Positions 23,991-61,049 of a stretch of DNA of 64,000 nucleotides are shown here, one piece after another; the first letter of the stretch is position 1, and every line of letters starts with the position of its first letter. The position numbers and the translations under genes are program-made. This stretch comes from Amphiscolops sp. MND2022. Lineage: Eukaryota. The notes beneath the pieces were generated by a model. The model saw only the letters and a program-made list of their open reading frames with translations, was not told where the DNA came from and did no database searches. The stretch spans positions 31,992,001 to 32,056,000 of the forward strand of contig OZ076409.1 of the NCBI GenBank assembly GCA_964187785.1, read 5' to 3'.

Positions 23991-24336
23991 CGCCACGCCT
24001 TTATACAAAATTACCACAAGAACAAAACACAGCAGATGACTGGCAGCATAAGCTGATCCCAAAACCTACAAAAACAGCAATTTGCGAAACTAAATCAACA
24101 TCACAAATCTCTCAACAGTCAACACTGGAAACTCAATCTGAAGACTTATATGAACTCTTACATGACGCACCAGACAACTACTTTCGACAAAAATCAACCC
24201 ATCCCAAAATCGACTCAACTCCATAAGTTCACCACACTTCAAAAAACCATGTCACAAAAAAACTTGGAATGATGAAAAACAACCCCTTTTAGATGAAGAT
24301 CTCACTGAATACATACAATTTGACAAGGAACGAAAC

Positions 24337-37369: not shown

Positions 37370-37756
37370 TGAGAGTAGCTACTTAGTCGCTCTAACTCTA
37401 GTGAAAAGTTGTGAAGATTGAGAAGTTGATTAATTAGTCTCTTGGTCCTAACACCCAACTTGACTATAGCTATTCAGTCGTGAAAATCTCTATCTAATAA
37501 TGGTATACATATTGTTTACAATTCTACAGTAAATATTGCGCAAATATGAGTAAGTATAAATAAATGACATTTAAAGCATAATATGAAGTTATTAGCTATG
37601 TAAACAAACAATGTGGTGTTTTGGAGTGTTGATTAGGTGGTCTAGAAAGTATGTTTACACAATATAAATATCATCAATTCCAACAGAGTTACATTTTCTC
37701 CAATGACATATGACAAAATCACATAATATTTAGTACATCAAAATGTGTACCGTACA
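37370..37756 (-). repeat. 5' LTR of a minus-strand LTR element (copy 2 at 40738-41118, end-truncated), followed by PBS-like TGGAGAGCCGG and gag-like remnants to ~35540
   Basis: Minus strand reads TGTACGG...CTCTCA, then TAGTTGGAGAGCC, then broken ORFs 36977-37327 and 36880-37065. Confidence 0.6.
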
Positions 37757-40700: not shown

Positions 40701-41119
40701 CCTCACTGTATCTTTACGCGCTCCGGCTCTCCAACTATGAGAGTAGCTACTTAGTTGCTCTAACTCTAGTGAAAAGTTGTGAAGATTGAGAAGTTGATTA
40801 ATTAGTCTCTTGGTCCTAAGACCCAACTTGACTATAGCTATTCAGTCGTGAAAATCTCTTTCTAATAATGGTATACATATTTTTTAAAATTCTACAGTAA
40901 ATATTGAGCAAATATAAATAAGTACAAATAAATGACAATTAAAGCCTAATATGAAGTTATTAGCTATGTAAACAAACAATGTGGTGTTTTGGCATGTTGG
41001 TTAGGTGGGCTAGAAAGTATGTTTACACAATGTAAATATCATCAATTCCAACAGAGTTACATTTTCTTCAATGTCATATGAGAAAATCACATAAGAATTA
41101 ATACATCAAAATGTGTACT

Positions 41120-41700
41120 TCATGGGGTTCGACCTAGGTCACTTTGGGTGTTAATTACTCGCAACCCATGGAAGATACGGGGTTCGGTGTTCCGAGTGAA
41201 AAGTTGAGCTAGCAACTCTAGTTTCTACCTGCGAAGCTTCAGGGTTATTGGTCAAGTGCTTCTGTGAAAGGTGGTGGTGTTATTTTACACGAGGCCAAGT
41301 TTGCTAAAAGTTGTAATTTTCCAACTGGAATCTTGGTAAAATTTCTAAGTTTTCTGAGTTATAAGTTTCATCAGTCACGGTCGAATTTGAGTTTCTGATC
41401 TCGCAATTGACTGGCGCCAACAAAAGCACTCATATAAGCCATTTGGGCATCTTGTCCCTCCATATGTCTTTCCGTAGACATTTGAAGTTCCATCTGAAGT
41501 GCCTCAATGTCAGCGGTAATTGCTTCATTCTCGCAGCTGCACTCAGCTTTGCTCCCAGTCAATTGAGTGGCTGCCTGCCTTGCTTCCACTTGCGAGTCCA
41601 GTGTTGCTTTACGAGCGACCGCTGCCTAATGTACCGCCCGATACGCAGAAGATCTATTCAAAGCTCTGGACTGAGGTGATAATGATGCGCCATGAGGTGC
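41120..41700 (-). pseudogene. Retrotransposon gag N-terminal fragment (coiled coil and EPRIFHG)
   Basis: ORF 41371-41589 is coiled-coil-like; EPRIFHGL near 41180 resembles the P..F.G start of a gag capsid. Confidence 0.4.
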
Positions 41701-42353
41701 GGTAGTCGTGGTTTGTGCCAGTATTTCAGAGAGTTTTACTGCGTGCCTTTCCTTTACAATCACTTTTTATCAATGGTTGCAACTTACACCTGATGCGTTC
41801 CTCTCTTCTACACCCTATAAAAGTTTTTTGAAAGTTTTTTTCACGTCTTGAGTACACTAAGCAGCATGTAAAGCAACTTAGTAGTGCTTGAACTTTGTTC
41901 CAGTTCACGGTCAACTCACGGTCGAAAAACAACAGAAGAATTTGCTGGCAAATCCTGCATATAATGTCAACCGACTCACGGTGGAGACAAAAAAACTAAC
42001 TGAGGAAATCACTGAAAAATCATTCCATATAATTTTTGGGGTGAAATTTTATCACCAACTAGTGAACGCACGCATAACATTGTAATTTTAGTTCAACGTG
42101 CAATCAGATGTTTTAAAACAGGCGTTGAAGATTTAATTAAACAGCGTGCGGATCAGTAATACCATGAGAAAAATGTTGCAAGATTAGTTTGATTGAGGTT
42201 GAAGTTGAGGCTAAAATTGAGACGTGTCAGAAGACGCAACGGGCAGGAAACTGAAGCACAAAGGAACGTATATTGATAGTCTTTCGGCGTCATCATTGTC
42301 GACGAATTGATAAACCATTGATACGCTCAATTTCATTGTCTACAAGTTTAGAA

Positions 42354-45199
42354 ATGTCAGAATTTGAAAAATTCAGTCTACCACTAGATGAAGGGAAAGA
42401 ATGCATTGATTCCAAAATTTTAGACTTTATATCAGGACACACGTTACAAAATTGTCAACGGAAACTTACTTCAATTGTTGCTGAAATGGTCGTAGGGACC
42501 ACTCTGAAGACATTCGATCTTATTCAGAAATTACCAATTAAAGGGCAGCCCCAGGGATCTGTTTTTGTTGCATCGAAAATAATGAAACTTTTAATTGTGC
42601 GAGGCTATAGAGACTTACCTTGGAACGAGAAGAGAAGAGAATTCGTTGCAAAATATTTTAACACCAATTTTTTTCCCGACGTCGGTACTTTTACGAATGA
42701 TAAATTTTCTTCTCAACATGGGATGGTTATAATATTACGCAGTTGCAACTCAAAAAGTGTCAAAGAACTATTAAGAAAACTTTTTGGACCCAAGTCTTGA
42801 ATTTTGCTAGAATGCATGGTATACATATTCACGTATTAGCCACAATTCTCAAAGAACAGCATCAGAAACGTAGCGCGTGGCGGAAAAGGAGCGCAAGCGG
42901 TAATCACATTCGAGACTTGTTCACGGGTCTTTTGGAGGACAGGGGCTACTCCGAGTGCTTTAGGTACAAACGTTCAATCAAAATGAAAACTGGAAACATA
43001 GAAGATATCCTCAATGCAATTCGACAACAGCTAGTTTCGGTTGACTTAGGAGGCGGTTGCCTAGTACCGTCAATTCGTCACATCAATAGAGCGACTAGCC
43101 TCATAATGAAATTGTTTGTTACAATATGCGAGCCTGAGCGAACCTATTCTGGATTTCGAGTCAATTTACTGGAAGCAGTGACGTTTGCGTCATTAGTTTT
43201 ACTGCAAAAAATCAATCTTGAAGGCCTTAAAACTGATATTTGGGGTGACGGTTGTGAAATAGGGGAGTTGAGGTAACGCGTCTAGCATTCAGAATTTTGA
43301 ACACCACAGTTAGCAGCCAATCATCGAAAGCTGTCTTCTGTTTTGCATCCTATCGTGGCCAAGATGGCCGATGTGCAATGGAACACATTTTTGGACCGTC
43401 TATCCTGGGTAAGCAAGAATCTGGATGGCTATACTGAACGTTCAACTGAACGTTCAAGTTCTCATCCCTCACAACTTCCGATATTTGTATGCGATAAAAA
43501 TTGCCTCCCCACCTGGTGCTCAGATGTCGATGAAAGACGCACATTTTTGAAGATCCCATTCAGACAACATGTTCCTAGAGAAGCATTATCAAGCATAATC
43601 GATGTCAGAACAGCCTGCCCAGACGCTACACACATGATAACGCGTTGCACCGAGAATGATATTAGAAAAGTGGCTCAGAAGGCAATTAACGACAAACATC
43701 TCCGGGAAACTTTAGGCATACAGCGCTTTGAAAAAAAGCTGACCAGCCGAGAAGCTAAATGACCGTCTTTTCAGTTCAATATTACCCACAAAAACCTAGG
43801 TAAAATAACCAGGAACAGTAGGACCACTGTCATTAGCGGGGTCGAATGCACTCACAGTTATAGCTGAAACAGAGAACTTAGAAATGCTCAACTTGGAACA
43901 ATCACGAACCTTTATAACGGAGTTTGGACGACAGAGACACGTCTTGGAAGTGAGGATGGATACAACTTGGGGGCTGCAAAAGTACTGAAGTCTTTACATC
44001 CACATTTATTTGACAAACGGGACCCCATAAATCCAAGAAACGAAGAAAGATATATGTCAGTGTTTGAAGCTTGTGAGCTTCAACGACAAAGTTTAAACCA
44101 GTGTGCTATTCTGTTGAGAAGTCAGGGAACATTTGATGTCGACACTCACAAACGATGGGCTGAAACATACTTTCAAATTAATTTGCTTCTCTTCGGGCGA
44201 AAGGGGTTGTCACCATACAAACTCAAGCTTCCATTGATAGCCCAACTAGTTGAAAGGGGATACATTGAGAGGCCATGGAATCACCTCTGAGAAGGCTTGG
44301 AAAAATCGAACCACAATGCCAACAGAAATTTTGAATCCTGAACCACGAGAGGCGGTGTCTCCATTTATCATCAAGATCCATTATTTCCGGATACTGCGGT
44401 TTCATTTTGCCGGTTCCTGGATATTTCTCCAACAATTTCCGAAAAAAATATCCAATGTCATTGAACATGTAAGAAAAACACTCACGACTGAAGAGACTCT
44501 CGAGGGTGTCAAAACTTATCTAGACATATGTAGAGCTCCCCTGGCGGTACTCTGCCTTGCTGTTGGCGAAACGAGAGAATTTTGCGACCTTCTAAGAGGA
44601 TTGAGATTTACAATGGTAGATAGGTTCAAGCGTGGTCTCACACAGGATTTCCTCAAAGATAAAAATTCCGAAATGGGAGGTGTCGTTTATGAGAAAGAAA
44701 ACGCAGAGAACCTAATGAAATCCCTTTCAAATATCTTGAATTTTTACGTTATTGTCAAAGATGAAGAGAACCTTATTAATGCGACCGGCGAAAAACATCA
44801 ATTGAAAGCCATGGGAACAAAACTGAAGCTCCATAGACATTGTTCCGCGAACGAGTTGTCAACAGTGAAAATGAAAATTTTGCAACAAAAAAGAAGTTAT
44901 CTTCAGCAGCTTTGGCCTGCAAAAGATTTGCGTCGGGGGGGTTTGATGTTAATCACTGTTGATTACGTACTCAAAATGAAAAAATCTACCGTATTTCTAG
45001 ACCCTGAAATATATATATCATAATGTCTGGACTCTTGATCAACCGGATGAAAATTAATGACATGCGACCACTCTTAATGGATCAAATAGATGATAACAAA
45101 TCAATAGAGAATACTTCTGCCATTGTTGCATTGAAAAAAATCCGAAACGCCTTAGTGAAACTTAACAAATTTCGAGCTGATGATCGTCTTTCAATGTAA
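42354..45199 (+). pseudogene. RAG1/Transib-like DDE transposase with C-terminal BRCT-like domain, frameshifted
   Basis: DIWGDGCEIG/GVEVTRLAFRIL...SSQSSKAVFCF (cf. RAG1 D600 SCDG...RFSF); CPDATHMITRCTE (cf. DALH/DELH); SPYKLKL...ERGYIERPWNHL*EGLEKSNH (cf. TNYFHK...EGNESGN, E962); tail LRGLRFTMVDRF...EMGGVVY...VDYVL...LDPEIY. Confidence 0.7.
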
Positions 45200-48100
45200 T
45201 TTTTGCAAGTGCTTGTTCATTACTTGATTTTGAAGACATATACTTTTATCTTTGCTTGTGGTAATAAATTAGCTTTTGAACAATTTTTTCTCGGAAATTT
45301 AGAAGAAACTCATTTATTGAAAACTAAAAAAGGATTTCTCAAAAAAGTAGCAGTTTTTCGACCTTTATAGCAACTGGTAAAACTTTGGCGGTCCTTTTCA
45401 CATTTGGGGTGGTAAATAAAACAGTTTGAAAAATGAAGTCCGGAGCGTGCTGAAACCACGTAGTTTTCTAACAAGTGGGATGGTTACAGGAGTAAAAAAA
45501 CACCAGTTTTGTAAAAATTTGAAATCCTGAATAGTCTTGAATTTTATTGCAGTGAATTCCACTCTTTTGGAAAGCGTTCCTTGTACTGAAAAAAGCAGTT
45601 AGTGGAATTGAAAAACACATACAAGTACATTGACAGTGGATTCCACAATCAAATGCTTAATTATTAGCAAAACAATCCAAAGGGGTCTTTTCAGTGAATT
45701 ACAGTTCTAAATAGATTTAAATTTCTATTGCAGTCGATTCCACTAGTCTGGAAAGTTTTCTTCACCCTGCGAAAAGTGATATGTGGAATCGACTAACGTA
45801 TTCCAAAACATTGACAGTGGATTTCACAAACGAATGCTTAAACATTTGCAAACCAATTCAAAAGGGGTATGTACAGCAAAACGAATGACATCAGGCTACA
45901 TTAATTAAAATTAACAATTAACGCACTCATAGTCACGACGAAAGAAATCATGAACGAATTTAATGATCAAAATAATCATAAGTTCCAATAATAGAAAACT
46001 TTGATTACGTTTGTCCTAAAAAAATGTGACTTCAGAGAAGTTGTCCAATAAAATAGGTTTTCGCAAGACGTGTGCAACGTTCATCTATCTAAAGTGCATT
46101 TAAAAAACTTTTGGTAGGTCAAAAGTTGAATCATTTTGTGTTCTAGAAGGAGTCTGCTCTCTTTCCGTTTTTCATTTTGCTTAAATATGTTTCCTTTTGT
46201 TTACCATTCATTTGTTCAAATGTATTCATTCACTCAGCACAATTGGAATGAATCTGAAGAAAGTGTCAATTTGGTAAACTTGTTTGTAGTTGTAGCGTCA
46301 TAAAAAAACTGTTACAAAAGTTCACGGAACCGAGAATGCTAATTCGATTTTGAATGGCTGCCAAAGTGGATGTAGGAAATGTTTTTCTAGTTCAGGAAAT
46401 TGATTCTCTGTCGTTCGATCTTTCAATTCAACCGCTTGCTAGTTTCGCTAATTTCAACCGCTGGCCAACTTAATTCAAAAAGCCTTCTTTAAGCCTTTGC
46501 CTGACCTTTGTCATACTAGTTTTTAAAATCAATATCCTTATACGTTGCCTGCTTCCTCTGTTCATATTGGTTAGTGTCTTTTTTTTAATGTTTTACCTCT
46601 ACAATTAGGGATACGAAATAAAAATGTTAGTTACAGTTGAAAAACTTTGTGCATCCACCGTCAGTAGAAAAAGAGTCAGTTGTAGAAGTTTTTTGGTACA
46701 CACCGTGAGTAAAGTTTTGTTCTGCTTTTGTATAGAAATTTTTTGTATCCACCGTGAGTGGTGGAAAAAACCTGAGTTTGTATAGAAAAAAGTTGGTACA
46801 CACTGTCAGTAAACAGTCCTCTTGAATTTCCATAGGGAAAGTTTCGTTTCCCCCGAGTAGAAAAACAAATCTGAGTTTGAACTGCCATCTTCTTTGAACA
46901 GGCCTGAGTGAAAAACTGTTCACCATTTGTAGAAGCAACTTTTCGTTTCCACAGTGAGTAGAAGTAAAAAGCCCCCCAGCATGTTTACTCTCCCCCCCCT
47001 CAATTCGTTAAGGAGTGAGTCAAAGGAAATGAGTCTTTCAATGTAATTTTTGCAAGTGCTTGTTCATTACTTGATTTTGAAGACTTATACGTTTATCTTT
47101 GCTTGTGGTAATAAATTAGCTTTTGAACAATTTTTTCTGGGAAATTTAAAGAAACTCATTTATTGAAAACTAAAAAAGGATTTCTCAAAAAAGTAGCAGC
47201 TTTTCGACCTTTATAGCAACTGGTAAAACTTTGGCGGTCCTTTTCACATTTGGGGTGGTAAATAAAACAGTTTGAAAAATGAAGTCCGGAGCGTGCTGAA
47301 ACCACGTAGTTTTCTAACAAGTGGGATGGTTACAGGAGTAAAAAAACACCAGTTTTGTAAAAATTTGAAATCCTGAATAGTCTTGAATTTTATTGCAGTG
47401 AATTCCACTCTTTTGGAAAGCGTTCCTTGTACTGAAAAAAGCAGTTAGTGGAATTGAAAAACACATACAAGTACATTGACAGTGGATTCCACAATCAAAT
47501 GCTTAATTATTAGCAAAACAATCCAAAGGGGTCTTTTCAGTGAATTACAGTTCTAAATAGATTTAAATTTCTATTGCAGTGGATTCCACTAATCTGGAAA
47601 GTGTTCTTCACCCTGTGAAAAGTGATATGTGGAATCGACTAACGTATTCCAAAACATTGACAGTGGATTCCACAAACGAATGCTTAAACATTTGCAAACC
47701 AATTCAAAAGGGATATGTACAGCAAAACGAATGACATCAGGCTACATTAATTAAAATTAACAATTAACGCACTCATAGTCACGACGAAAGAAATCATGAA
47801 CGAATTTAATGATCAAAATAAACATAAGTTCCAATAATAGAAAACTTTGATTACGTTTGTCCTAAAAAAATGTGACTTCAGAGAAGTTGTCCAATAAAAT
47901 AGGTTTTCGCAATACGTGTGCAACGTTCATATATCTAAAGTGCATTTAAAAAACTTTTGGTAGGTCAAAAGTTGAATCATTTTGTGTTCTAGAAGGAGTC
48001 TGCTCTCTTTCCGTTTTTCATTTTGCTTAAATATGTTTCCTTTTGTTTACCATTCATTTGTTCAAATGTATTCATTCACTCAGCACAATTGGAATGAATC

Positions 48101-50715
48101 TGAAGAAAGTGTCAATTTGGTAAACTTGTTTGTAGTTGTAGCGTCATAAAAAAACTGTTACAAAAGTTCACGGAACCGAGAATGCTAATTCGATTTTGAA
48201 TGGCTGCCAAAGTGGATGTAGGAAATGTTTTTCTAGTTCTGGAATTTGATTCTCTGTCGTTCGATCTTTCAATTCAACCGCTTGCTAGTTTCGCTAATTT
48301 CAACCGCTGGCCAACTTAATTCAAAAAGCCTTCTTTAAGCCTTTGCCTGACCTTTGTCATACTAGTCTTTAAAATCAATCTCCTTATACGTTGCCTGCTT
48401 CCTCTGTTCATAATGGTTAGTGTCTTTTTTAATGTTTTACCTCTACAATTAGGGATACGAAATAAAAATGTTAGTTACAGTTGAAAAACTTTGTGCATCT
48501 ACCGTCAGTAGAAAAAGAGTCAGTTGTAGAAGTTTTTTGGTACACACCGTGAGTAAAGTTTTGTTCTGCTTTTGTATAGAAATTTTTTGTATCCACCGTG
48601 AGTGGTGGAAAAAACCTGAGTTTGTATAGAAAAAAGTTGGTACACACTGTCAGTAAACAGTCCTCTTGAATTTCCATAGGGAAAGTTTCGTTTCCCCCGA
48701 GTAGAAAAACAAATCTGAGTTTGAACTTCCATCTTCTTTGAACAGGCCTGAGTGAAAAACTGTTCACCATTTGTAGAAGCAACTTTTCGTTTCCACCGTG
48801 AGTAGAAATAAAAAGCCCCCAGCATGTTTACTCTCCCCCCTCAATTCGTTAAGAAGTGAGTCAAAGGAAATGAGATTTTCAATGTAAATTTTGCAAGTGC
48901 TTGTTCATTACTTGATTTTGAAGACTTATACGTTTATCTTTGCTTGTGGTAAAAAAATTAGCTTTTGAACAGTTTTTTCTCGGAAATTTAGAAGAAACTC
49001 ATTTATTGAAAACTAAAAAAAGTAATTCTCAAAAAAGTAGCAGTTTTTCGACCTTTATAGCAACTGTTAAAACTTTGGCGGTCCTTTTCACATTTGGGGT
49101 GGTAAATAAAACAGTTTGAAAAATGAAGTCCGGAGCGTGCTGAAACCACGTAGTTTTCTAACAAGTGGGATGGTTACAGGAGTAAAATACACCAGTTTTG
49201 TAAAAATTTGAAATCCTGAATAGTCTTGAATTTTATTGCAGTGAATTCCACTCTTTTGGAAAGCGTTCCTTGTACTGAAAAAAGCAGTTAGTGGAATTGA
49301 AAAACACATACAAGTACATTGACAGTGGATTCCACAATCAAATGCTTAATTATTAGCAAAATAATCCAAAGGGGTCTTTTCAGTGAATTACAGGTTAAAT
49401 AGATTTAAATTTCTATTGCAGTGGATTCCACTAATCTGGAAAGTTTTCTTCACCCTGCGAAAAGTGATATGTGGAATCGACTAACGTATTCCAAAACATT
49501 GACAGTGGATTCCACAAACGAATGCTTAAACATTTGCAAACCAATTCAAAAGGGGTATGTACAGCAAAACGAATGACATCAGGCTACATTAATTAAAATT
49601 AACAATTAACGCACTCATAGGCACGACGAAAGAAATCACGAACGAATTTAATGATCAAAATCAACATAAGTTCCAATAATAGAAAACTTTGATTACGTTT
49701 GTCCTAAAAAAATGTGACTTCGGAGAAGTTGTCCAATAAAATAGGTTTTCGCAAGAAGTGTGCAACGTTCATATATCTAAAGTGCCTTTGTAAAATTTTT
49801 GGTAGGTCAAAAGTTGAATCATTTTGTGTTCTAGAAGGAGTCTGCTCTCTTTCCGTTTTTCATTTTGCTTAAATATGTTTCTTTTTGTTTACCATTCATT
49901 TGTTCAAATGTATTCATTCACTCAGCACAATTGGAATGAATCTGAAGAAAGTGTCAATTTGGTAAACGTGTTTGTAGTTGTAGCGTCATAAAAAAACTGT
50001 TACAAAAGTTCACGGAACCGAGAATGCTAATTCGATTTTGAATGGCTGCCAAAGTGGATGTAGGAAATGTTTTTCTAGTTCTGGAATTTGATTCTTTGTC
50101 GTTCGATCTTTCAATTCAACCGCTTGCTAGTTTCGCTAATTTCAACCGCTGGCCAACTTAATTCAAAAAGCCTTCTTTAAGCCTTTGCCTGACCTTTGTC
50201 ATACTAGTCTTTAAAATCAATCTCCTTATACGTTGCCTGCTTCATCTGTTCATAATGGTTAGTGTCTTTTTTTAATGTTTTACCTCTACAATTAGGGATA
50301 CGAAATCAAAATGTTAGTTACAGTTGAAAAACTTCGTGCATCCACCGTCAGTAGAAAAAGAGTCAGTTGTAGAAGGAGTTTTTTGGTACACACCGTGAGC
50401 AAAGTTTTGTTCTGCTTTTGTATAGAAATTTTTTGTATCCACCGTGAGTGGTGGAAAAAACCTGAGTTTGTATAGAAAAAAGTTGTAACACACTGTCAGT
50501 AAACAGTCCTCTTGAATTTCCATAGGGAAAGTTTCCGAGTAGAAAAACAAATCTGAATTTGAACTGCCATCTTCTTTGAACAGGCCTGAGTGAAAACTGT
50601 TCACCATTTGTAGAGGCAACTTTTTGTTCCCACCGTGAGTAGAAATAAAAAGCCCCCAGCATGTTTACTCTCCCCCCTCAATTCGTTAAGAAGTGAGTCA
50701 AAGGAAATGAGTCTT
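45186..50715. repeat. Three tandem copies of a ~1.84-kb unit (45186-47032, 47033-48873, 48874-50715)
   Basis: Unit starts GTCTTTCAATGTAATTTTTGCAAGTGC at 45186 and 47033, with a variant at 48874; each unit ends GTCAAAGGAAATGA; non-coding. Confidence 0.95.
45545..45880. repeat. ~180-bp tandem repeat with palindromic GTGGAWTCCAC cores (present in each triplicated unit)
   Basis: ATTGCAGTG.ATTCCAC...ACATTGACAGTGGATT.CAC...AAAGGGGT, two units. Confidence 0.8.
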
Positions 50716-51048
50716 ATACTACGATTCTTACCGTATAATGATTGAAATGGTGATGGGTGTTCATTACGAAGTGAATCATTAGGAAGTGAGTCATATACTA
50801 CGATTCTAATCCTGACAAATAAAGTATTGGGGGATACTTTCTAAGAAGTAGGTTTGGGGGATAACAGAAAAGACCCGAATTCGATCTTCATATCTCAATT
50901 TAAGAGTGAGCAATCCAATATTTTATGGTTCTGATGTCAAAGATCAATTCTTTTTGATACTCATACATATATTTACATAACAATTGAAAAAATCAGTACT
51001 TGCGCAAAACTTCAAGGTGAAACTATAGTGTTGTGCTTGTTTCTAAAG

Positions 51049-53700: not shown

Positions 53701-54135
53701 CCCTTTTGAATTGGTTTGCAAGTGTGTAAGGATTTGTTTGTGGAATCCACTGCCAATGTATTGGTATACGTTAGTCGATTATACATATTGCTTTTCGCAG
53801 GATAAAGAATACTTTCCAGAATAGTGGAAACCACTCCATTAGAAAATAAATTCTATTTAGAACTTATAGTTCACTGAATGTACCCCCTTTGAATTGGTTT
53901 GCAAATGTTTAAGCATTTGTTTGTGGAATCCACTGTCAATGTATTGTTATACGTTAATCGATTCCACAAATCACTTTCCGCAGGATGAAGAATCCTTTCC
54001 AGAATAGTGGAATCCACTGCAAAAGATAATTAATTCAATTTAGAACTAAGAATTCACTGAATGTACCCTTCTTGAATTGGTATGCAAATGTATAAAGATT
54101 TGTTTGTGGAATCCACTGCCAATGTATTTGCATAT
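53690..54135. repeat. Inverted array of the same ~180-bp GTGGAATCCAC repeat
   Basis: 53878-53945 is a near-exact reverse complement of 45807-45870. Confidence 0.85.
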
Positions 54136-54504
54136 GTTTGTCATATCCACCTACCGTTTCTGGTTTTCACCTACCGATGCCATCAGATTTATTAGACCGT
54201 TTGTACCGAAAGTTTTGAAAGTGCCACAACCTAAGTAACAAATCAGTAATACGCATGTGGAATACGCATTACTTGAAATTATCTACTGGAGACTTTCTCA
54301 AGAATGTAGTCACAAGTAAAAAAAAATTTCGACATCATTTACTGTAACAAGGACAATATTACTGTAACAATCGATTTAAGAAAAAAGAACTTTAATAGAA
54401 CAAAACCAACAGAAATACTATTCAGTTTTTTATGGTAACAAAACAGACGTTTTTTGGAGACCTAATCGCACACTTACTCACGGTGGATACCAAAAATGCT
54501 ACCC

Positions 54505-55790
54505 CTATTGGTCAACAAAGTATTCAATGTGCGCATGTTGGGTGTTATGTCTAAAGCTTTGTCGATGATCTTCAAGATTTTTGTGGTGACCTTCGGTTGT
54601 AGTTATGTGGCATCTGATTGAGAACATCATAAAGTCGCGCTGTTCCGTGATTTTCAAAGTCTTGATCAATGTGGCAGGCTCATCTTCAAGCACATCTGCA
54701 ATGATGTCCCAGTTCTTGCCCAATATAGAATCTAAGCTGTTATAGCTTCCCAAGTTTCCCGTTTCAACTTCCAATAAAAACTTCACGGTTTCTTTGCTTG
54801 AGTGCGACTTGAACCCAAAGACACGTTTTGTGAGCTCCGTTGCAGGGATCATATTTGTCACAGTTGATGATTTCTTAAACGACAAACCAACACATCTCTT
54901 GATTGTCGAAAAGACTGCAAACGTTCTATCAACACCGTTATCAAGAGTGAAAAAGTTTAATCCCACGTTTTCGAAATTCCGAGTTTTTCAACGAACAGTT
55001 GTTGACCGGCATCCTAAGGTCGCAGTCTTCATCGTTCACGGATACCATTATTGCAAATGGTTTCAACTTCTGCGCACTATAGTATAAATCTTCAACTTTG
55101 AATTCCATTCCAGACAAAGTAATGATGGATCCTTCGACAAATTCCATTGACACATGGTACATAACTTAATTTGACATCAACATCGATTTTCGGGATCAAT
55201 GTTGAAAAATCTATTTCCGGTATTTGTGTTTTAGTTCTTTTCTGTTTTGGTTCTTCCCGATGTTCCTGCCTCGTCTCTTCAGCTTTCTCGTTGTCTTCCG
55301 CTTTCTCATCGTGAACATGGATGTCTTCCACTGAGTTCTTCAAATAACAATAGGGGATAAATCTAAACATTTCGTCCATCTCCACGACACACTCATGGGT
55401 AAATGGGTCATTCGTCGAATTAGTTCTCGTTTGAATTTTTCCATGGGAATCAATAAAACAATGCCCCACACAATCACATTCGGGTAGCAAGAATGTCACG
55501 GGCTCGTTTTTTTTGCCGCCAGTTTGTGTTATACGACAGGGGTTTAGAACGCTTCTTCGACATGACTGGTTGCGAATGTCGATCTTTTCTAGTGTTCCAC
55601 CTATTTGGGTCAGTACGCAATTCTACAGGAATTCCTATTGCCTGCAGACGATTGTTCCAGTCGATCCATTGGATTTTCAGAGATCTAATGACTTATGAAC
55701 GCTATTATCTTCGCAGACTCCCAAATATAAGTTTCGGGGTGGAGGATTTGAACAACTTCGTATAGTTTAAAAGCTTGCAAAAGCATTGTA
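54505..55790 (-). pseudogene. Frameshifted gene with a putative N-terminal Tudor/chromo-barrel-like domain; remainder unknown
   Basis: KLYEVVQILHPETYIWESAKIIAF/IRSLKIQWIDWNNR resembles Tudor-knot/Agenet patterns; ORFs 55685-55888, 55092-55499, 54941-55162 and 54505-54966 join by frameshifts. Confidence 0.45.
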
Positions 55791-56244
55791 GTGGAGTTTA
55801 AAATTGACCGCAACGGGAAGAAACACGTGAGCTTCCTCTGAGCACAAACTATTCGAATTTGTGCAAAGTGATTACCAGGTGCCAACACAAAAACTGCGCA
55901 AAAGTGAGGCTAATTTCACGGTGATGGACCTAAAAAAGGTGTCATTCCTTTCGAGCGCCTAATAAAAGAATTATCACTAGGAATTAATTTATCTAGTGAG
56001 TGTTAGTATGTTCAAATAGGTATTTGAGTCATGGAAAGACTCAATCACCGTATTAATCTGATAACACTTACTAGTTAAAGCTATTAATTTAGTCACCGTG
56101 AGTGTGCAATATGTGAAATCGACTCTTCTGCTGTTTAGTAAAATGACGCTTTTCCAAAAAAACTATTAACATTTTAATTTCTTTTTACATCATAATGTTG
56201 ATTCATTCATTGAAATCCATTGTCAATATTTGAGCTCCAAGGTT

Positions 56245-58010
56245 ATGAATAATTCCAGCATGCCTGACAAAAATTCAACTCTCGAATTGACACTCTTGTG
56301 TCCATCTCAGACTTCTACGCCTGTGCAATACTCACATCAACGATCTACCGACTGGAATCTGCCACCTAGAAAATTTACTGCGGAATGCTCACAATCTGAC
56401 ACAGATTCCTTTGCCGCCTCAGAACCTCTTGCAACAGACCCTCCGTCGCGGAATTTACTGCCTCACCAGAACGATGCCACCAGAGCAATGAGCCCCCGAA
56501 TAATGTGTCACCCCATATCAATGAGCTACCCGAGAAGCGTCCAAATGACTCCCAGTGCAGTGAGGATAGTTTAAGTAATAGCCAATCCAAATGCGCGAAA
56601 GTTACTTACATTGACAACAACGTGTACGAAAGCACGTTGACTAAACATGTGAAGGCATCGAAAGAAGACGTGGGACTAGTACAAAAAGCTAAGTTCTTTC
56701 GATGCATAATTACAACCCTGTTCCATTTTGCGGTACCACCTATGCTTGAAAGTTCCATCAGGAATGTCCCGGTACACTCAGTTGTGCAAATCGTGATGGA
56801 TCACGAAGAAAATTCATTGAGTGACTCCCTCAATATCTGTGTGGAACACATAATTGGATCAACGGAACGAACAGTTCACAAAGTACACGGAAATCTTGTT
56901 GAAGCATTCAAAGTATATTCTACACAAACTCGGCCATATTTTGTTACCAACGACACCAAATTAGCCATTGTTCGATACGAAAAAGACGACAAACGTCCAA
57001 TTAATACAGAGTTATTCTTAGTGAATTCAATTGGTTGAAAGGACTCCCACGTTATATCTGTTGTGGATCTTTTCATTTCATGCAAAAAAGCAGAAAAAAA
57101 AGAACAAAATACATTGAAAAGTAAAGTCGCGGAACTGATGCCACTTTCCAATGACCCCTGCCTCAAAATCGCCAAGCTGAAACATGCAATGACTTTGGTT
57201 CTTTCGAATGTCGAAGGTTTCGACAGAGATGAGGTGAGAAACGCTGTTCGCGCCCGCCAAGACCAGCAAAGGTACACTCGCCAGTCAGCCAGGGCATTGA
57301 TATACTTTGAACACGTTTCTGGAAAAGTTGCTACTAACTGTCTTGAGTCGAGAGTGGCGGCAATTTTCCAGCGACAAAAGTGGACTTCGCTAGAGGATAA
57401 AAACCATGACGTGAAAAAACTGACAGCGCAGTTATTGATTCTCTCTAACAACCAGTCAATTAGAAAAACCTCGCAGATACCTGAGAGCAGTAGAAATTGG
57501 TGTGCTGGACTGGCCCAAAACTTGCCGTATGAAAAACAAATTATGTTGTCGCAACGTGGCGAGACGCAGCTCTGGCCTGGAATCTGTTTTGCCAAAAAGA
57601 CAAAATTTGGGAGATGTGTGATTGCCCTACAGAAATTTTCAAAGGACGACATTTTAATGGATTACCATGGCGAGGTGTATTTGAACGTGTCATTGAGCCA
57701 GGTCTTCGAGAAAGAAGGTGTGGAACAGGAGTTCGTTCTGGAGGTTAAAAGTGGCGCCTCTAGAAGAACCACTGATGCCTCGAAAGAGATTTGCCCCTTC
57801 ACCCAATTATTCGCAGCCCTGGACGCCTTGCCAACCACTCGCAGTTGAAATCAAACGGCGCCAACATGAAGCCTATATTGATTGAGTTGTTTCAAAATGG
57901 CAATAAGATTGTAGTGTTCCTCAAACGTTCTACCATTTGAGCAGCTCCGTTTTGATTACAATGACCCTATTGCCAATCAGTTTTTTCAGGAACGTGATGA
58001 TTCCCAGCCG
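56245..58010 (+). pseudogene. Tyrosine-recombinase-like domain fused to a PR-Set7/SETD8-like SET domain, frameshifted
   Basis: SET: GRCVIALQKFSKDDILMDYHGEV, DASKE...GRLANHSQ, EQLRFDYND (cf. GRGVIATKQFSRGDFVVEYHGDL, GRLINHSK, EELLYDYGD). Upstream YR-like boxes MLESSIRN, VEH, LFLVNSIG, KLKHAMT, QQRY. SET is confident; YR is weaker. Confidence 0.75.
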
Positions 58011-58809
58011 ATATTTGACTGATGGAATCGTCAGAACACTCCGTTTTCAAAACAATTATCTTTTTGTTGTTGTGTATTCGTTTGTTCTTTACTTTCGTTT
58101 TAATTTCACTTGCGATTTTGTATTTAAACACTGATTGCTACAGATACAAATGTTTTTTTTTCGTAACACTGGAACAAAACACCGTGAATAACAATTTCAG
58201 TGAATCCTTGCAACGTCTTCTTCACCTAAATCTAGATGAGGGTAAAGATAATGATAGAGATTAATAATTTGATTTCCATTCATCTTTTGGCTTGTAGTTT
58301 ATTTTGAAAGTTTGGTATCCACCATGTGTTAATTGAAAACGAAAACTAGTTATACCTAAAATACACGGAGAAGCTGTGGGTGAAATTTTGATATCAACTC
58401 TCTTGATGTAATAAATTCTGAAGTAGCGTCACATTCAGCGTGCAATTTGACTAACAGTGATTTGACGCTACTTTTAAATATACTAGATGACTAAAGTTGA
58501 ATTTGTAGAATGGTAGAATTGATAAGGTCCCCGTTGCAGTCTGCTTGGAAGTATGATTCAATCAAAGAATGAAAAAAAAAACAAGTCAAACTAAAGTGGT
58601 AAAGCGGTGCGTGTATCAAAATAAATTGATTGACAAAAACTCTGTAGTAATAATTTTGAACCAAATGAAAAAAATCTGAATTTTGCTTTTTGTGACACTT
58701 GCTGACTCTGAAAATGTTCCTCATTCTCAAAACTGAACACGTGAAGGAAACACTTTTAGGCACTGAAGTACATGAACTCCACTTCTTTTCGTTGCGTTGC
58801 TTCGTTACC

Positions 58810-59215
58810 TCCTGTCCCTTGTGAAGATGAGAGGTGCTCCCAGGCATTCCAATGACTCAATCGGTTGATAATAGATGTCCGCATACTACACTATTTGCAG
58901 AAAAGACGTTGAAATACGTCTCGAGAGGGTCGAAATTTTTTTTAGCGGGTGTAGCGTAACGAAAATCACACGGCGTGTTGATATTGATGCGGTAAGGTGA
59001 AAAATAGTCGTTTACGGCCGCTGGGATAGCTATTTGGAACACCAGAGGTTTTTTTGGTTTTTAAGTTTTACAAATGTTTCAATTAACTGCTCGAATGGGT
59101 AGTGAACGCAATGTAAGCGTCGGATTTGGTTCAAAAACGGCCATTCGTCTGTGTGGTGTGTTTTTGCCATTTTACAAAGAGTATCGTACCAATCGAAACA
59201 AAATTTGATAGTCAT
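58810..59215 (-). pseudogene. Putative JmjN/JmjC (KDM4/KDM5-like) fragment
   Basis: YPFEQLIETFVKL...GVFQIAIP (JmjN-like) followed by VIGMPGSTSHLHK (cf. YVGM.FS.F.WH.ED); frameshifts and a stop. Confidence 0.4.
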
Positions 59216-61049
59216 TGCCAGTGAGTACTCACAAAGTTGTTGGAGTAGTCTAATGGATGCACGGGTGTTTCGGTGAGGTTCCGACTAGGTACTGTCACAG
59301 CCCCAGCGGTGCTGCGAGGAAATATATCAGTTGAGAACGCTTGAGGAGGAAAGTGGAGAAGATGACTAAAATAACAACATAAGAACCTGAAAGAGCTAAA
59401 CCAACAAACGTCCACTAACACATAGAACAAATAAATAGTTATTTAAATATTATTAATAAATTTATCCCAGTGCAGTACCTAAAATACATGAATATGTAAA
59501 TACCTAAATAATATTAAAAGCTATAAAGATGATTTGTATACAGTAAAATGGCCGGTGCGACGAGCGGAAGTAATCCAACCAGCATACCGACTAGCTTACT
59601 GTCTCAATAACAGCGGAGCTAAACGAATCAATTTTCATTCTCTCATAAATCAACCAATCAGCGATTAGCGCAAATGAACAGCGCTAGCGGAGTAGTCATC
59701 CTAGTCAATTCTCCAATCGACCGAAATCTGGGACGACCGCCCAGTCGCTCGACTGAATAATTGATAAAGATGGCTTAGATAATCAACATTCTGTGGTAAC
59801 CGTAATACTATCCCAGCTCAAAAGAAGCTGAATTACGATAGAATATTCATGAAAACGATAGAATAATTACCTAATGATGTGAAATTGATGCTAACGAACA
59901 GACTTAATACTTCTAATTTTGAGTCAACCACCCAGGCAACCTTCCAACCATACAATTTTGAAATTAACTCCCATTACCTATATTACTGTCCTAAAGATTT
60001 ATTACGATCAATGTACAATGTATAATACATATACGGTCCTAATCGAATTTGTAAAACGTTAAAAAGATGAATAGTAGTGAAATGTGCCGTAATGCTATTG
60101 ATGAGATAGCAAGTGTGAAATATATTTGTCTGAATCCAAAATGACACCCCAGTCTCCTCCCCGACAATCTAAACTTTATTTTTTCGCAGAAGTGATGGAA
60201 CCATTCGATTTAAGGATGTACACTATTTACACCCATCGATGCGGTATTACCAGTCCCTTGTTACGTATTAACAACTCTAATATGCTGTTCTGTTAAATGT
60301 TTTACTAATAGTGAAATTTGTTCAAGCAATTCTGAGTCAACACTCTAGTCAACCGTTCAGTCAACTTAGACTAGAACGAGCTACCAGAGGTGCGACCAAG
60401 ATAATTAATTGTCCAATCAGTGTAAAAATGTTGGTGCTGAGGAGTACTTAATTAATATTCAAATTGGAAAATGTACTTATTTCATATTTTGTGATACCGG
60501 TGATTAATTCCCATTTTTGTTTCGATTTAAACTCAGTACTTTTCCCGCGTCAGTTGCTAGGTCCATGAACTTTCATTGCCAACTTTGAACTCGGCGTCAC
60601 AAATTGGCGGGAAACGAAGGAGAAGGAATGCGGAATCAGGACTTCGGGAGCAAGTGAATTCCCACTTTTCTTGAAGTGAGATGAAGCTGAATGTCGAGGC
60701 TTGAGGAACCTTTCCTAATTCGGATTTTCCCGCCTTGGAAAGAAGCCGAGTGGAACGAGGTGTGAGTTCACGCACGAGATTTATCTCGCGTGTCTAGCGA
60801 AAAGTATAAATATACCTGACGCTGGTTAAGAGTGTTAATTGTTGAATTTTGTTAGGATGAATCTAACTTGAAGCAGTTTTACCCTTTGAAAGATCACACC
60901 TTTGAAACTATCAGTGATCTCATTTCAGCATTTTGTATCAACATTGTTTGTTAATTTGCCAACGTCCAGTTGTTTGTATTTTGTTGTTCATCTTGATCAA
61001 GTGAACTTGTCTTTTGTTGAAGTTGGAACTTCTTTGATGAAGTTGGAAC

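What the first reader, a model, noticed from the sequence alone, without database searches (positions are those of the whole stretch)
41880..59400. Candidate giant DNA transposon island carrying chromatin writer/eraser/reader genes
Seen: five decayed genes packed in ~17.5 kb between retroelements, namely a RAG1/Transib-like transposase, ZnF-JmjC-ELM2, a Tudor-like gene, YR-like-SET and JmjN/JmjC-like. One ~21-bp motif recurs in the gaps between them in both orientations. Known: SET domains methylate lysines, JmjC domains demethylate them, Tudor domains read methyl marks, ELM2 occurs in HDAC corepressors, and some large DNA transposons (e.g. KDZ/Zisupton-type) carry chromatin domains. Inference: a cargo-carrying element, or cluster of related ones, that encoded its own chromatin toolkit, possibly to evade silencing. 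I know no described element with this combination. This copy is dead.
Basis: partly seen in the sequence, partly recalled or inferred. Interest (0 to 1): 0.9.

Follow-up and report, generated by a model that had tools for sequence, protein, structure and literature searches.

The report
Giant transposon carrying histone-modifier genes
This stretch is a dead, end-truncated copy of a 16-17 kb jumping gene that carries its own histone demethylase-like and histone methyltransferase-like genes; intact, recently mobile copies sit elsewhere in the same assembly.

Summary
Window 41752-58799 is one decayed copy of a multi-copy DNA transposon. Complete copies on other contigs of the same ENA assembly are 15.9-17.0 kb. 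They end in a 21-bp terminal inverted repeat (TIR; 5'-CATTACAGTGCCAAAAGTGGG) and have a 2-bp target-site duplication (TSD) in 5 of 5 pairs. Gene order is the same in at least 9 copies.

The element has four genes, not five:
- A 1001-aa DDE transposase with no Pfam match. Its predicted fold matches only RAG1/Transib/ProtoRAG. A BRCT-like tail is weakly supported.
- A five-exon gene with C2H2 zinc fingers, a KDM2/PHF8-type JmjC domain and a partial ELM2 motif.
- A 420-aa protein of unknown fold. The "Tudor" call could not be tested.
- A 677-aa protein ending in a SET8/KMT5A-like SET domain. The "YR" call found no support.

The fifth "JmjN/JmjC" gene is not supported and lies mostly outside the element.

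All four genes are intact in young copies, which are 97-98% identical to each other. dN/dS is below 1 for all four. A relative whose transposase is only 28% identical also carries a SET gene.

The 21-bp motif is real and forms inverted clusters around the transposase gene.

The closest analogue is the giant red-algal Plavaka elements with a SET/2OG-oxygenase cassette. I rate this a new variant of a known kind.

The parts
41752..58799 (+). Truncated, decayed copy of the giant TIR transposon. It lacks about 1.0 kb including the TIR on the left and about 0.4 kb including the TIR on the right.
   Evidence: Collinear blastn at about 85% identity with M1 (L002+L001), L003/L012, L004, L006/L009, L007, L008, L010 and L011. 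The terminal sequences found in other copies are absent from the window.
41914..41994 (+). Left cluster of the 21-bp motif in + orientation, upstream of the transposase start. There are two copies here, the first weak; intact copies have three.
42354..45160 (+). Transposase pseudogene (intact homologue 1001 aa). At least 7 in-frame stops, at least 3 frameshifts, and residues 126-157 unmatched (about 32 aa missing).
   Evidence: tblastn with the L011 ORF. The family has 242 clusters in the 1.84-billion-protein representative library. The AF2 model has pLDDT 87.7. Its top 45 Foldseek PDB hits are all RAG1, HzTransib or BbRAGL.
45143..50711 (.). Three tandem copies of a 1845-bp unit (one unit in other copies). 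Each unit carries 181-183-bp sub-repeats and three minus-orientation copies of the 21-bp motif.
51028..53704 (+). Gene 2 pseudogene with C2H2 zinc fingers, a KDM2/PHF8-type JmjC domain and an ELM2 N-terminal motif. Exon blocks lie at about 51028-51255, 51406-51845, 52388-52624, 52895-53278 and 53519-53683. The start codon is lost, the HxD iron-binding motif is deleted, and there are 9 in-frame stops.
   Evidence: Pfam on window pieces: zf-C2H2 2.4e-6, JmjC_2 5e-4, ELM2 3e-4. The exon blocks are conserved in all copies. Introns in L011 are GT-AG. PDB hits: KDM2A 5e-11, PHF8 3.6e-10, ceKDM7A 4.5e-4. Lesions.
52241..52261 (+). TIR-like sequence (CTTTACAGTGACAAAAGTCAG) inside intron 2 of gene 2, at the same place in the other copies checked.
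53693..54159 (.). 183-bp repeat array, inverted relative to the arrays inside the 1845-bp units. It carries the subterminal motif GAAATCCACTG.
54476..54496 (+). Single exact copy of the 21-bp motif, just 3' of gene 3.
54532..55786 (-). Gene 3 pseudogene (intact homologue 420 aa) of unknown fold. Four frameshifts.
   Evidence: There is no Pfam or PDB match and the AF2 model was unusable. dN/dS is 0.32.
56245..58111 (+). Gene 4 pseudogene (intact homologue 677 aa) with an N-terminal region of unknown function and a C-terminal SET8/KMT5A-like SET domain. The SET remnant lies at about 57600-58020. Residues 42-89 are lost, and there are frameshifts and at least 6 stops.
   Evidence: The intact copies pass Pfam SET at 5.7e-9 with 36.8 bits against a 22.4-bit cut-off. 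PDB hits are 4ldg 1.4e-7 and KMT5A 1.5e-4.
58112..58799 (.). Non-coding tail of the element with a weak minus-orientation motif copy at 58309-58329. Homology to other copies stops at 58799, about 400 bp short of the right TIR.

Best explanation
Window 41752-58799 is a dead copy, truncated at both ends, of a 16-17 kb cut-and-paste DNA transposon family.

Shown:
- Complete copies end in a 21-bp terminal inverted repeat (5'-CATTACAGTGCCAAAAGTGGG ... CCCACTTTTGGCACTGTAATG-3') and are flanked by a 2-bp target-site duplication of no fixed sequence.
- They carry four genes in a fixed order. The first is a 1001-aa transposase with conserved D, D and E residues on an RNase-H-like topology and a RAG1/Transib-like predicted fold; a BRCT-like tail is weakly supported. 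The second is a five-exon gene with three C2H2 fingers, a KDM2/PHF8-type JmjC domain with the HxD...H iron triad, and an ELM2 N-terminal motif. The third is a 420-aa protein of unknown fold. The fourth is a 677-aa protein ending in a SET8/KMT5A-like SET domain.
- The whole unit moves together. Young copies are 97-98% identical end to end and sit in unrelated flanks.
- All four genes show dN/dS below 1.
- A relative whose transposase is only 28% identical also carries a SET gene and a weak gene-3 homologue.

Inferred: the accessory genes act for the element. The most likely route is that the zinc fingers bind the 21-bp motif arrays inside the element. This would bring the demethylase, and the methyltransferase with it, to the element's own chromatin and keep it transcribable despite host silencing. 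This parallels VANDAL/VANC and the PAG3-plus-repeat-array arrangement of red-algal Plavaka elements.
For: - Collinearity at about 85% identity with 9 other contigs.
- TIRs, and 2-bp TSDs in 5 of 5 complete copies: AA, AA, AC, TT, TA. A third base never matches. My estimate of the chance probability is about 1.5e-6.
- The flanks of different copies are unrelated.
- L011 has intact ORFs of 1001, 420 and 677 aa plus five open exons with GT-AG introns.
- L010 and L011 are 97-98% identical over 16 kb.
- There are 76-92 distinct ORF sequences per gene at 90% or higher identity, on recurring contigs. One exon product is identical on 8 contigs.
- Transposase: D203, D289 and E371 are 98-100% conserved in 68 relatives. 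The strand/helix order is that of an RNase-H fold. The Foldseek top 45 hits are all RAG1/HzTransib/BbRAGL, best E 1e-5.
- JmjC and SET.
- dN/dS of L011 against the window: transposase 0.55 (0.45-0.68), gene 2 0.38 (0.27-0.52), gene 3 0.32 (0.22-0.44), gene 4 0.65 (0.50-0.87).
- Distant relative L013 carries a transposase, a SET gene and a gene-3-like ORF.
- The motif core occurs 13 times against 0.58 expected, as a + cluster upstream and a - array downstream of the transposase gene, about 1 kb upstream of gene 2.
- The analogous Plavaka cassette is described in 10.1101/2025.02.11.637652.
Against: - No expression, splicing, enzymatic or DNA-binding data exist. The anti-silencing role and the finger-to-motif link are inference by analogy.
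- Substrate specificity cannot be read from about 30% identity to KDM2/PHF8 and SET8.
- The pairwise dN/dS values mix selected and neutral branches, and the tblastn-based codon alignments leave out the broken parts.
- The ELM2 match covers only 23 of 53 profile positions.
- The host organism is unidentified. An animal is suggested only by the BEL/Pao-type elements nearby.
- JmjC was not seen in the one distant relative with readable neighbours, so it may be a recent addition.
- The Foldseek TM-scores are low (about 0.3), and no sequence profile links the transposase to RAG1/Transib.
Confidence: 0.78

Rival explanations
1. Same element, but the accessory genes serve the transposition reaction or DNA repair rather than anti-silencing. 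A SET8-like enzyme writing H4K20 methylation, a PHF8/KDM2-like eraser and a BRCT tail on the transposase would tune double-strand-break repair or target-site chromatin at excision and integration sites. SETMAR/Metnase, linked to end joining, is the precedent.
For: SET8/KMT5A is among the closest characterised relatives of the SET domain. PHF8/KDM7/KDM2 are closest for the JmjC domain. BRCT-like matches recur in the transposase family: P0032 reaches 22.7 bits against a 21.3-bit cut-off, others give E 3e-4 to 7e-4. From general knowledge, H4K20 methylation and BRCT domains act in the DNA-damage response, and PHF8 removes H4K20me1. The SETMAR literature appeared.
Against: Substrates are unknown. 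Most BRCT matches are below Pfam cut-offs, and none appears in L011 itself at E <= 0.05. The repeat arrays next to a finger-bearing demethylase fit self-targeting better. This reading does not exclude the main one.
Confidence: 0.2
2. The accessory genes are passengers. They would be host genes picked up by the transposon, as in Pack-MULEs or Helitron captures, with no role for the element.
For: Gene 2 keeps four spliceosomal introns, as expected for genomic capture of a host gene. Inverted 183-bp arrays bracket the gene-2 module, and a TIR-like sequence sits in its intron, which hints at a secondary acquisition. No JmjC was found in the distant relative L013.
Against: The ORFs are full-length and intact in young copies. 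The catalytic motifs are retained. dN/dS is significantly below 1 for every gene. The SET association persists at 28% transposase identity. Captured fragments are normally partial and decay neutrally.
Confidence: 0.07
3. The transposase belongs to an already named Repbase superfamily that has no Pfam model or solved structure (Mirage, Chapaev or another CMCT lineage). The element would then be a gene-carrying member of a known superfamily, not a new lineage.
For: 5'-CA...TG-3' termini and a 2-bp TSD fall inside the range given for the CMCT clade (PMC12730594). The RAG1/Transib-like fold is what a CMCT relative would show. From memory, unverified, Mirage is listed with 2-bp TSDs.
Against: The C(2)C and H(3-4)H motifs said to be shared by all CMCT lineages and RAG1 are absent. 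The second D and the E are only 82 residues apart. The termini are CAT...ATG, not the invariant CAC...GTG of Chapaev. There is no hit to the Pfam Plavaka, Transposase_21 or RAG1 models.
Confidence: 0.35
4. It is not one transposon. It would be a segmental duplication of a host gene cluster, or a nest of independent elements that happen to lie together.
For: Internal repeat arrays and a TIR-like sequence show a composite history. L005 and L007 are rearranged or deleted copies.
Against: Five complete copies share the same two ends, each with its own 2-bp TSD and unrelated flanks. There are dozens of copies. Young copies are 97-98% identical along the whole length.
Confidence: 0.03

Closest known systems
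Giant Plavaka (EnSpm/CACTA-related) DNA transposons of red algae with the PAG1-3 accessory cassette (Bostrychia moritziana preprint, 10.1101/2025.02.11.637652)
   Same: Both are TIR DNA transposons of 16-19 kb. Both carry three accessory genes besides the transposase: one of unknown function, one with a SET domain, and one joining a DNA-binding module to a 2-oxoglutarate-dependent oxygenase. Both have tandem or inverted repeat arrays beside the oxygenase gene. In both, most copies are degenerate.
   Different: The transposase here does not match the Pfam Plavaka model, Transposase_21 or any other transposase model. The SET protein has no N6-adenine methylase domain. The oxygenase is a histone-demethylase-type JmjC with C2H2 fingers and an ELM2 motif, not a ParB-like fusion. 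The TSD here is 2 bp. The host looks like an animal, not a red alga.
Transib transposons / RAG1 / ProtoRAG
   Same: They are the only strong structural neighbours of the predicted transposase core. Both have a DDE triad on an RNase-H fold with a D(2)H motif just before the E. Both termini start with CA.
   Different: There is no sequence-profile similarity. The TSD is 2 bp, not 5 bp. The terminus is CATTACAGTG rather than a CACAGTG-like heptamer. [quoted passage not shown] A BRCT-like tail is present. No RAG2-like gene was recognised among the element's genes.
Fungal DNA transposons encoding TET/JBP dioxygenases (KDZ, Plavaka, ESTA, hAT7 and others; Kojima 2025, PMC12730594), and HarbingerS/MuDR and proto-Helentron elements encoding SET proteins in Phytophthora (PMC12730594, PMC4067079)
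   Same: These are transposons that carry an enzyme acting on epigenetic marks, interpreted as escape from silencing.
   Different: Those elements carry one modifier, either a DNA demethylation enzyme or a SET protein alone, and use other transposase superfamilies. Here a histone-demethylase-type JmjC and a SET8-like methyltransferase travel together. I found no paper in the searchable library describing a JmjC-encoding DNA transposon.
VANDAL (MuDR) elements with VANC anti-silencing proteins in Arabidopsis
   Same: A transposon-encoded factor binds short motif arrays in non-coding parts of its own family and removes silencing (cited). This is the model I use for the finger-to-21-bp-motif idea.
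   Different: VANC has no recognised enzymatic domain and acts on DNA methylation. The link between the fingers and the motif here is untested.

Membership tests
Transib / RAG1 superfamily | RAG1-like core fold | tested here: met
   AF2 model pLDDT 87.7. The top 45 Foldseek PDB hits are all RAG1, HzTransib or BbRAGL, with best E 1e-5, probability 1.0 and TM about 0.3.
Transib / RAG1 superfamily | Sequence-profile similarity to the RAG1/Transib catalytic core | tested here: not met
   No Pfam hit even at E <= 10. A profile of 68 relatives finds no RAG1 or Transib chain in the PDB.
Transib / RAG1 superfamily | 5-bp target-site duplication | tested here: not met
   The TSD is 2 bp in 5 of 5 complete copies, and the third base never matches.
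Transib / RAG1 superfamily | TIR ending in an RSS-heptamer-like 5'-CAC(A/T)(A/G)TG (from general knowledge) | tested here: not met
   The terminus is 5'-CATTACAGTGCC.
CMCT clade (EnSpm/CACTA-Mirage-Chapaev-Transib, as defined in PMC12730594) | 5'-CA...TG-3' termini and 2-5 bp TSD | tested here: met
   CATTAC...GTAATG with a 2-bp TSD.
CMCT clade (EnSpm/CACTA-Mirage-Chapaev-Transib, as defined in PMC12730594) | [quoted passage not shown] | tested here: not met
   No conserved Cys or His pair lies between D289 and E371 in 68 relatives. Only D361(2)H364 is conserved, and the D-to-E spacing is 82 aa.
CMCT clade (EnSpm/CACTA-Mirage-Chapaev-Transib, as defined in PMC12730594) | Transposase sequence similarity to Mirage, Chapaev, ESTA or Lanisha references | not testable with these tools
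   Repbase and Dfam are not on hand. Pfam models for Plavaka and Transposase_21 gave no hit. Chapaev's CAC...GTG termini and 3-4 bp TSD do not fit.
   No Pfam KDZ-family hit. The TSD is 2 bp. The 8-bp TSD of Zisupton is stated.
JmjC demethylases, KDM2/KDM7 (JHDM1/PHF8) group | JmjC fold with the HxD...H iron-binding triad, and closest similarity to KDM2A/PHF8/PHF2/KDM7 | tested here: met
   Met in the intact copies. Exon C gives KDM2A 5e-11 and PHF8 3.6e-10 with 'WHVDF' aligned to 'FHVDF'. Exon D gives ceKDM7A 4.5e-4 with 'WPH' aligned to 'WIH'. Single exons score just below the Pfam JmjC cut-off (22.0 against 24 bits). In the window copy the HxD segment is deleted.
JmjC demethylases, KDM2/KDM7 (JHDM1/PHF8) group | Histone lysine demethylase activity and substrate | not testable with these tools
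   This needs an enzyme assay.
SET-domain lysine methyltransferases (SET8/KMT5A-like) | SET domain above the Pfam gathering score, with NHS and C-terminal Tyr motifs | tested here: met
   L011, L010 and L009 proteins score 36.5-37.8 bits against a 22.4-bit cut-off. PDB hits are 4ldg 1.4e-7 and KMT5A 1.5e-4, with 'GRLANHS' and 'LRFDY' aligned. The window copy keeps only a frameshifted remnant, with a weak KMT5A hit at E 0.2.
ELM2 domain | Match to Pfam ELM2 | tested here: inconclusive
   The score is 23.2 bits against a 21.7-bit cut-off, but only profile positions 1-23 of 53 match ('VRIGPTHQAEIPE'). No SANT domain follows.
Tudor / royal-family reader (gene 3) | Recognisable Tudor, MBT or chromo barrel | tested here: inconclusive
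   No Pfam hit. No PDB hit with the single sequence or the profile. The AF2 model had pLDDT 28.5 from a shallow alignment.
Tyrosine recombinase (Crypton-like 'YR', N-terminus of gene 4) | Integrase/YR catalytic domain | tested here: not met
   Neither Pfam nor the PDB matches anything outside the SET domain in the intact 677-aa protein.
Plavaka PAG cassette (red algae) | Plavaka/EnSpm transposase; PAG2 = N6-adenine methylase + SET; PAG3 = ParB-like + 2OG oxygenase | tested here: not met
   There are no Plavaka, N6_N4_Mtase or ParB hits. Only the functional layout is shared: SET, a DNA-binding 2OG oxygenase, an unknown protein and repeat arrays.

The most novel reading that the evidence does not exclude
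This is a previously unnamed, superfamily-level lineage of RAG1/Transib-related DDE transposases with at least 242 clusters at 50% identity. Its marks are a minimal insertion domain, no zinc module, a BRCT tail and a 2-bp TSD. It has travelled with a SET methyltransferase across very distant hosts. In this host it added a finger-guided JmjC histone demethylase that recognises 21-bp arrays in its own DNA. That would make it a self-targeted writer/eraser system by which an animal transposon resets its own chromatin.
Probability: 0.3. Interest if true: 0.9.

Novelty: new variant of a known kind. Interest (0 to 1): 0.76.

Why it matters
Transposons that carry their own epigenetic enzymes are known from fungi (TET/JBP), oomycetes (SET) and red algae (the Plavaka PAG cassette). 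I found no report of a DNA transposon carrying a JmjC histone-demethylase-type gene, nor of a JmjC/SET pair on one element, nor of any such element in an animal-like genome.

Intact copies at 97-98% identity exist, with open reading frames, matching TIRs (one mismatch in L011 and in L010) and clear TSDs. The idea that a transposon edits its own chromatin can therefore be tested directly, by expression, enzyme assays, motif binding and a transposition assay.

The transposase is of separate interest. It belongs to a large, unannotated family whose only structural relatives are RAG1/Transib, yet it lacks their zinc module and makes 2-bp TSDs. That bears on how the RAG1-type catalytic core diversified.

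Tried and rejected
- Pfam on stop-to-stop pieces of the window and on all 116 pieces of at least 40 aa from 50.6-59.8 kb. Only zf-C2H2, JmjC and ELM2 were coherent. The single LRR_14, YEATS, WAK and similar hits were treated as chance, given 116 queries.
- PDB phmmer on window pieces of the transposase found nothing.
- A PDB profile search with 68 transposase relatives found no RAG1/Transib. Pfam at E <= 10 found nothing.
- Gene 3: the homologue search found only same-family copies, AF2 gave pLDDT 28.5, and PDB single and profile searches were empty. The Tudor idea is neither supported nor excluded.
- Empty-site search using the flanks of 9 element ends against all held sequence found none, so the TSD rests on 5 flank pairs.
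- TSDs of 3 or 5 bp were rejected by inspection.
- Host identification failed. No source names were attached to any protein, the ENA accession is not in the paper library, and Rfam found nothing in 146 kb.
With A7 it returned 5 short environmental contigs with no accessory-gene neighbours, which is uninformative.
- L013 shows no recognisable termini, so the contig probably lies within or across an element.
- KDZ/Zisupton, Chapaev, HarbingerS and canonical Transib membership were rejected on TSD, termini and domain tests (see the membership table).

Full report
**What is in the window.** The window is eukaryotic-looking DNA of about 39% G+C with no N runs. Between 42.3 and 58.1 kb there are four runs of broken reading frames.
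- A run of about 920 codons on the + strand at 42354-45160.
- A set of short conserved ORF blocks on the + strand at 51028-53704.
- A - strand gene at 54532-55786.
- A + strand gene at 56245-58111.

Pfam on the window's own pieces gives only zf-C2H2 (2.4e-6), JmjC_2 (5e-4) and ELM2 (3e-4). These lie in that order on one strand. A frameshifted SET remnant can be read at about 57600-58020, with a weak KMT5A match at E 0.2. The 21-bp motif is real. All 12 matches in the 64-kb window fall between 41974 and 58329, and nine of them lie in the tandem units.

**It is a repeated unit with defined ends.** Protein searches with two window pieces found only unnamed ENA proteins. Fetching their contigs, all from assembly ERZ25074608, showed the same genes in the same order at about 85% nucleotide identity. 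The contigs are ctg184305 (L001+L002), ctg185264 (L003/L012), ctg181801 (L004), ctg183372 (L006/L009), ctg183676 (L007, internal deletion), ctg180354 (L008, with a retroelement inserted), ctg184008 (L010) and ctg176529 (L011). Contig ctg185493 (L005) holds a rearranged partial copy.

Homology among the other copies extends beyond the window copy on both sides. It stops at sharp common points. Those points are a 21-bp terminal inverted repeat, CATTACAGTGCCAAAAGTGGG on the left and its reverse complement on the right.

Five copies have both ends, and each has its own 2-bp direct duplication: AA, AA, AC, TT, TA. The third base never matches. I estimate the probability of five 2-bp matches at this base composition as about 1.5e-6. 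Flanks of different copies are unrelated. Complete copies measure 15,876 bp (M1), 16,114 bp (L010) and 16,964 bp (L011).

The window copy starts about 1.0 kb inside the left end and stops about 0.4 kb short of the right end, so it has neither TIR.

**Copy number and age.** At 90% identity or more, the protein clusters of the transposase, gene 3 and gene 4 hold 77, 76 and 92 distinct ORF sequences. Many contig lengths recur across the three lists. One exon product is identical on 8 contigs. L010 and L011 are 97-98% identical over their whole length, with synonymous divergence of 0.01-0.02. The window copy is old, with dS of about 0.22-0.27 to L011. The family has therefore been active over a long period and recently.

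**The transposase.** L011 carries an uninterrupted 1001-aa ORF. It has no Pfam match even at E <= 10. An exhaustive phmmer search of 1.84 billion representatives with the 524-aa core from L006 found 242 clusters at E <= 1e-3. Among them are intact proteins of 1000-1300 aa, none with an informative name. Several have weak BRCT matches near the C-terminus.

In an alignment of 68 relatives, D203, D289 and E371 (L006 numbering) are 98-100% conserved. They sit in the motifs DIWGDG, SGDxPF and CPDxxHxxxRxxE. The AlphaFold model has pLDDT 87.7. It places the two Asp on strands 1 and 4 of an RNase-H-like sheet and the Glu on the following long helix.

Foldseek against the PDB returns only RAG1, Helicoverpa Transib and amphioxus RAG-like chains in the first 45 places, with best E 1e-5 and probability 1.0. 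The IS256-family ISCth4, the P element and Hermes follow only at E > 1e-2. TM-scores are low (about 0.3), as expected for a multi-domain comparison.

So 'RAG1/Transib-like' holds at fold level. The family nevertheless fails the other Transib criteria:
- The TSD is 2 bp, not 5 bp.
- There is no heptamer-like terminus.
- There is no sequence-profile similarity.
- The C(2)C/H(3-4)H zinc motifs are absent. [quoted passage not shown]

The CA...TG termini and the 2-bp TSD do fit that paper's 'CMCT' range. Whether the family is a named Repbase lineage without a Pfam model cannot be decided here.

**Gene 2.** Five ORF blocks are conserved in every copy. In L011 they join through four GT-AG introns into one open frame that starts at an ATG. 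The introns are 9616-9887, 10331-10879, 11146-11294 and 11680-11935.
- Exons A and B hold three C2H2 fingers (zf-C2H2 1.1e-8).
- Exon C matches KDM2A (5e-11), PHF8 (3.6e-10), PHF2 and KDM7 over the segment with the HxD iron ligands.
- Exon D matches C. elegans KDM7A (4.5e-4) over the segment with the second His.
- Exon E carries the N-terminal ELM2 signature. It passes the Pfam cut-off at 23.2 against 21.7 bits, but only over 23 of 53 positions.

In the window copy the start codon is lost, the HxD segment is deleted and nine stops are present.

**Genes 3 and 4.** Gene 3 is a 420-aa ORF in L011 and 427 aa in L010. It has no detectable domain, and structure prediction failed for lack of diverse homologues. 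The 'Tudor-like' call can be neither supported nor excluded.

Gene 4 is a 677-aa ORF. Its C-terminal 130 residues are a SET domain (Pfam 5.7e-9, 36.8 bits). The closest solved relatives are a SET-domain protein (4ldg, 1.4e-7) and SET8/KMT5A (1.5e-4), and the NHS and Tyr motifs are present. Its N-terminal 480 residues match nothing, so 'YR-like' has no support.

The proposed fifth gene (58.4-59.4 kb) has no domain hit. Most of that span lies beyond the end of element homology at 58799.

**Are the accessory genes part of the element's biology?** Three lines of evidence say yes.
1. They are intact in the young copies.
2. Nei-Gojobori dN/dS between L011 and old copies is significantly below 1 for all four genes. 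Against the window it is 0.55 (0.45-0.68) for the transposase, 0.38 (0.27-0.52) for gene 2, 0.32 (0.22-0.44) for gene 3 and 0.65 (0.50-0.87) for gene 4. Gene 2 against L012 gives 0.26. These comparisons include neutral decay in the dead partner, so they understate the constraint.
3. A 10.5-kb contig from an unrelated run (Logan ERR15087781, L013) encodes a 1301-aa transposase only 28% identical (E 3e-71). Next to it is a divergently oriented 419-aa SET protein, 32% identical to gene 4's SET region (E 3e-26). A 452-aa protein weakly similar to gene 3 (E 5e-4) is also there. No JmjC was seen, so gene 2 may be a later acquisition. This fits with its introns, with the inverted 183-bp arrays that bracket it, and with the TIR-like sequence in its second intron.

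**The motif.** In L011 the 10-nt core ACTCACGGTG occurs 13 times, all inside the element, against 0.58 expected.
- Three + copies lie about 0.6 kb upstream of the transposase start.
- Eight - copies form two 230-bp repeats downstream of the transposase gene, about 1 kb upstream of gene 2.
- One further + match overlaps one of those - copies.
- One + copy lies just 3' of gene 3.

A second motif, GAAATCCACTG, is subterminal at both ends and also fills the internal 183-bp arrays.

**How it most likely works.** The following are shown: a TIR/TSD-bounded unit, a DDE transposase, retained catalytic motifs in the JmjC and SET genes, and purifying selection.

The rest is inferred. Cut-and-paste transposition is driven by the DDE enzyme acting on the TIRs and subterminal repeats. 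The three-finger JmjC protein is recruited to the 21-bp arrays; three fingers would read about 9-10 bp, which is the length of the conserved core. This brings a demethylase, together with the SET enzyme and gene 3 protein, to the element's own chromatin to keep it expressible.

The model follows VANDAL/VANC and the PAG3-plus-repeat-array arrangement in red-algal Plavaka elements. A rival reading is that a SET8-like writer, a PHF8/KDM2-like eraser and a BRCT tail act in break repair or target choice. Nothing here separates the two.

**Comparison and novelty.** The closest described system is the 17-19 kb Plavaka family of Bostrychia, which has PAG1 (unknown), PAG2 (N6-methylase + SET) and PAG3 (ParB-like + 2OG oxygenase) with adjacent repeat arrays. 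Fungal TET/JBP transposons, and HarbingerS/MuDR/proto-Helentron SET genes in Phytophthora, are further precedents. The layout here is parallel, but every component differs in family. Searches of the paper library found no DNA transposon reported to encode a JmjC protein. The BEL/Pao-type elements in the window and loci (DUF1759, DUF5641) suggest an animal host, because BEL/Pao elements are known only from metazoans (general knowledge). The host was not identified. I therefore file this as a new variant of a known kind.

**Limits.**
- Repbase and Dfam were not available.
- The host is unknown.
- There are no expression or biochemical data.
- The TSD rests on five pairs without an empty site.
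- The catalytic triad assignment is by conservation and topology, not by a residue-level structural alignment.
All proteins used are direct translations of natural copies.

Noticed in passing
window 34400-41118: A 3.37-kb unit is duplicated in tandem at 95.7% identity (34400-37750 and 37768-41118), each copy with a 165-aa ORF. Segments 37121-37744 and 40488-41422 match the roughly 950-bp LTRs of a BEL/Pao-type element that is inserted into the L008 copy of the transposon.
   Followed up: partly
window 13081-17961 (-) and 24166-28499 (+): These are decayed retroelements. One is BEL/Pao-type (DUF1759, RVT_1, DUF5641) and one is Gypsy-type (RT_RNaseH, Integrase_H2C2, rve). The 24-28 kb and 62-64 kb stretches show strong strand skew (GC skew about -0.25, AT skew +0.2 to +0.34).
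   Followed up: partly
L003 11857-17327: The right TIR appears four times; three of the four share the same downstream flank. This suggests a local tandem amplification across the element boundary.
   Followed up: no
L005 3165-10912: A palindromic partial copy. The gene-3/gene-4 part of the element is present twice in inverted orientation and joined near L005 6217.
   Followed up: no
L009 1-1646 (-): A second SET-gene copy (435 aa plus a 196-aa SET fragment) lies about 4 kb beyond the right end of the L006/L009 element. This suggests a neighbouring second insertion.
   Followed up: no
window 52241-52261; L011 10733-10753; L010 10733-10753; L004 4432-4452; L006 16558-16578: A TIR-like 21-mer (CTTTACAGTGCCAAAAGTCAG) sits inside intron 2 of the JmjC gene at the same place in every copy checked. 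It may be a relic of how this gene module entered the element.
   Followed up: partly
L011 element positions 5049-5415 (-) and 11158-11524 (+); window 45495-45885 (and its tandem repeats) and 53693-54159: The subterminal motif GAAATCCACTG also fills two internal 183-bp repeat arrays. The arrays are inverted relative to each other and bracket the 21-bp arrays and gene 2.
   Followed up: partly
Transposase family alignments A6 and A7, roughly residues 690-730 of the L011 protein: A strongly conserved C-terminal motif (HMTEALEKSNHHAHK...TMRGGG) lies downstream of the modelled core. It was not covered by the structure prediction and its role is unknown.
   Followed up: no
L014-L018 (OOEE01000468.1, OFKR01000163.1, JAAUXW01 contigs, Ga0265306_10048084): Environmental metagenome contigs encode transposases 36-49% identical to this family. 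They are too short to show neighbouring genes.
   Followed up: partly
L008 124-390: A MATH/TRAF-domain ORF lies in the flank of one copy. It is the only clearly non-transposon host-like gene seen near any copy.
   Followed up: no
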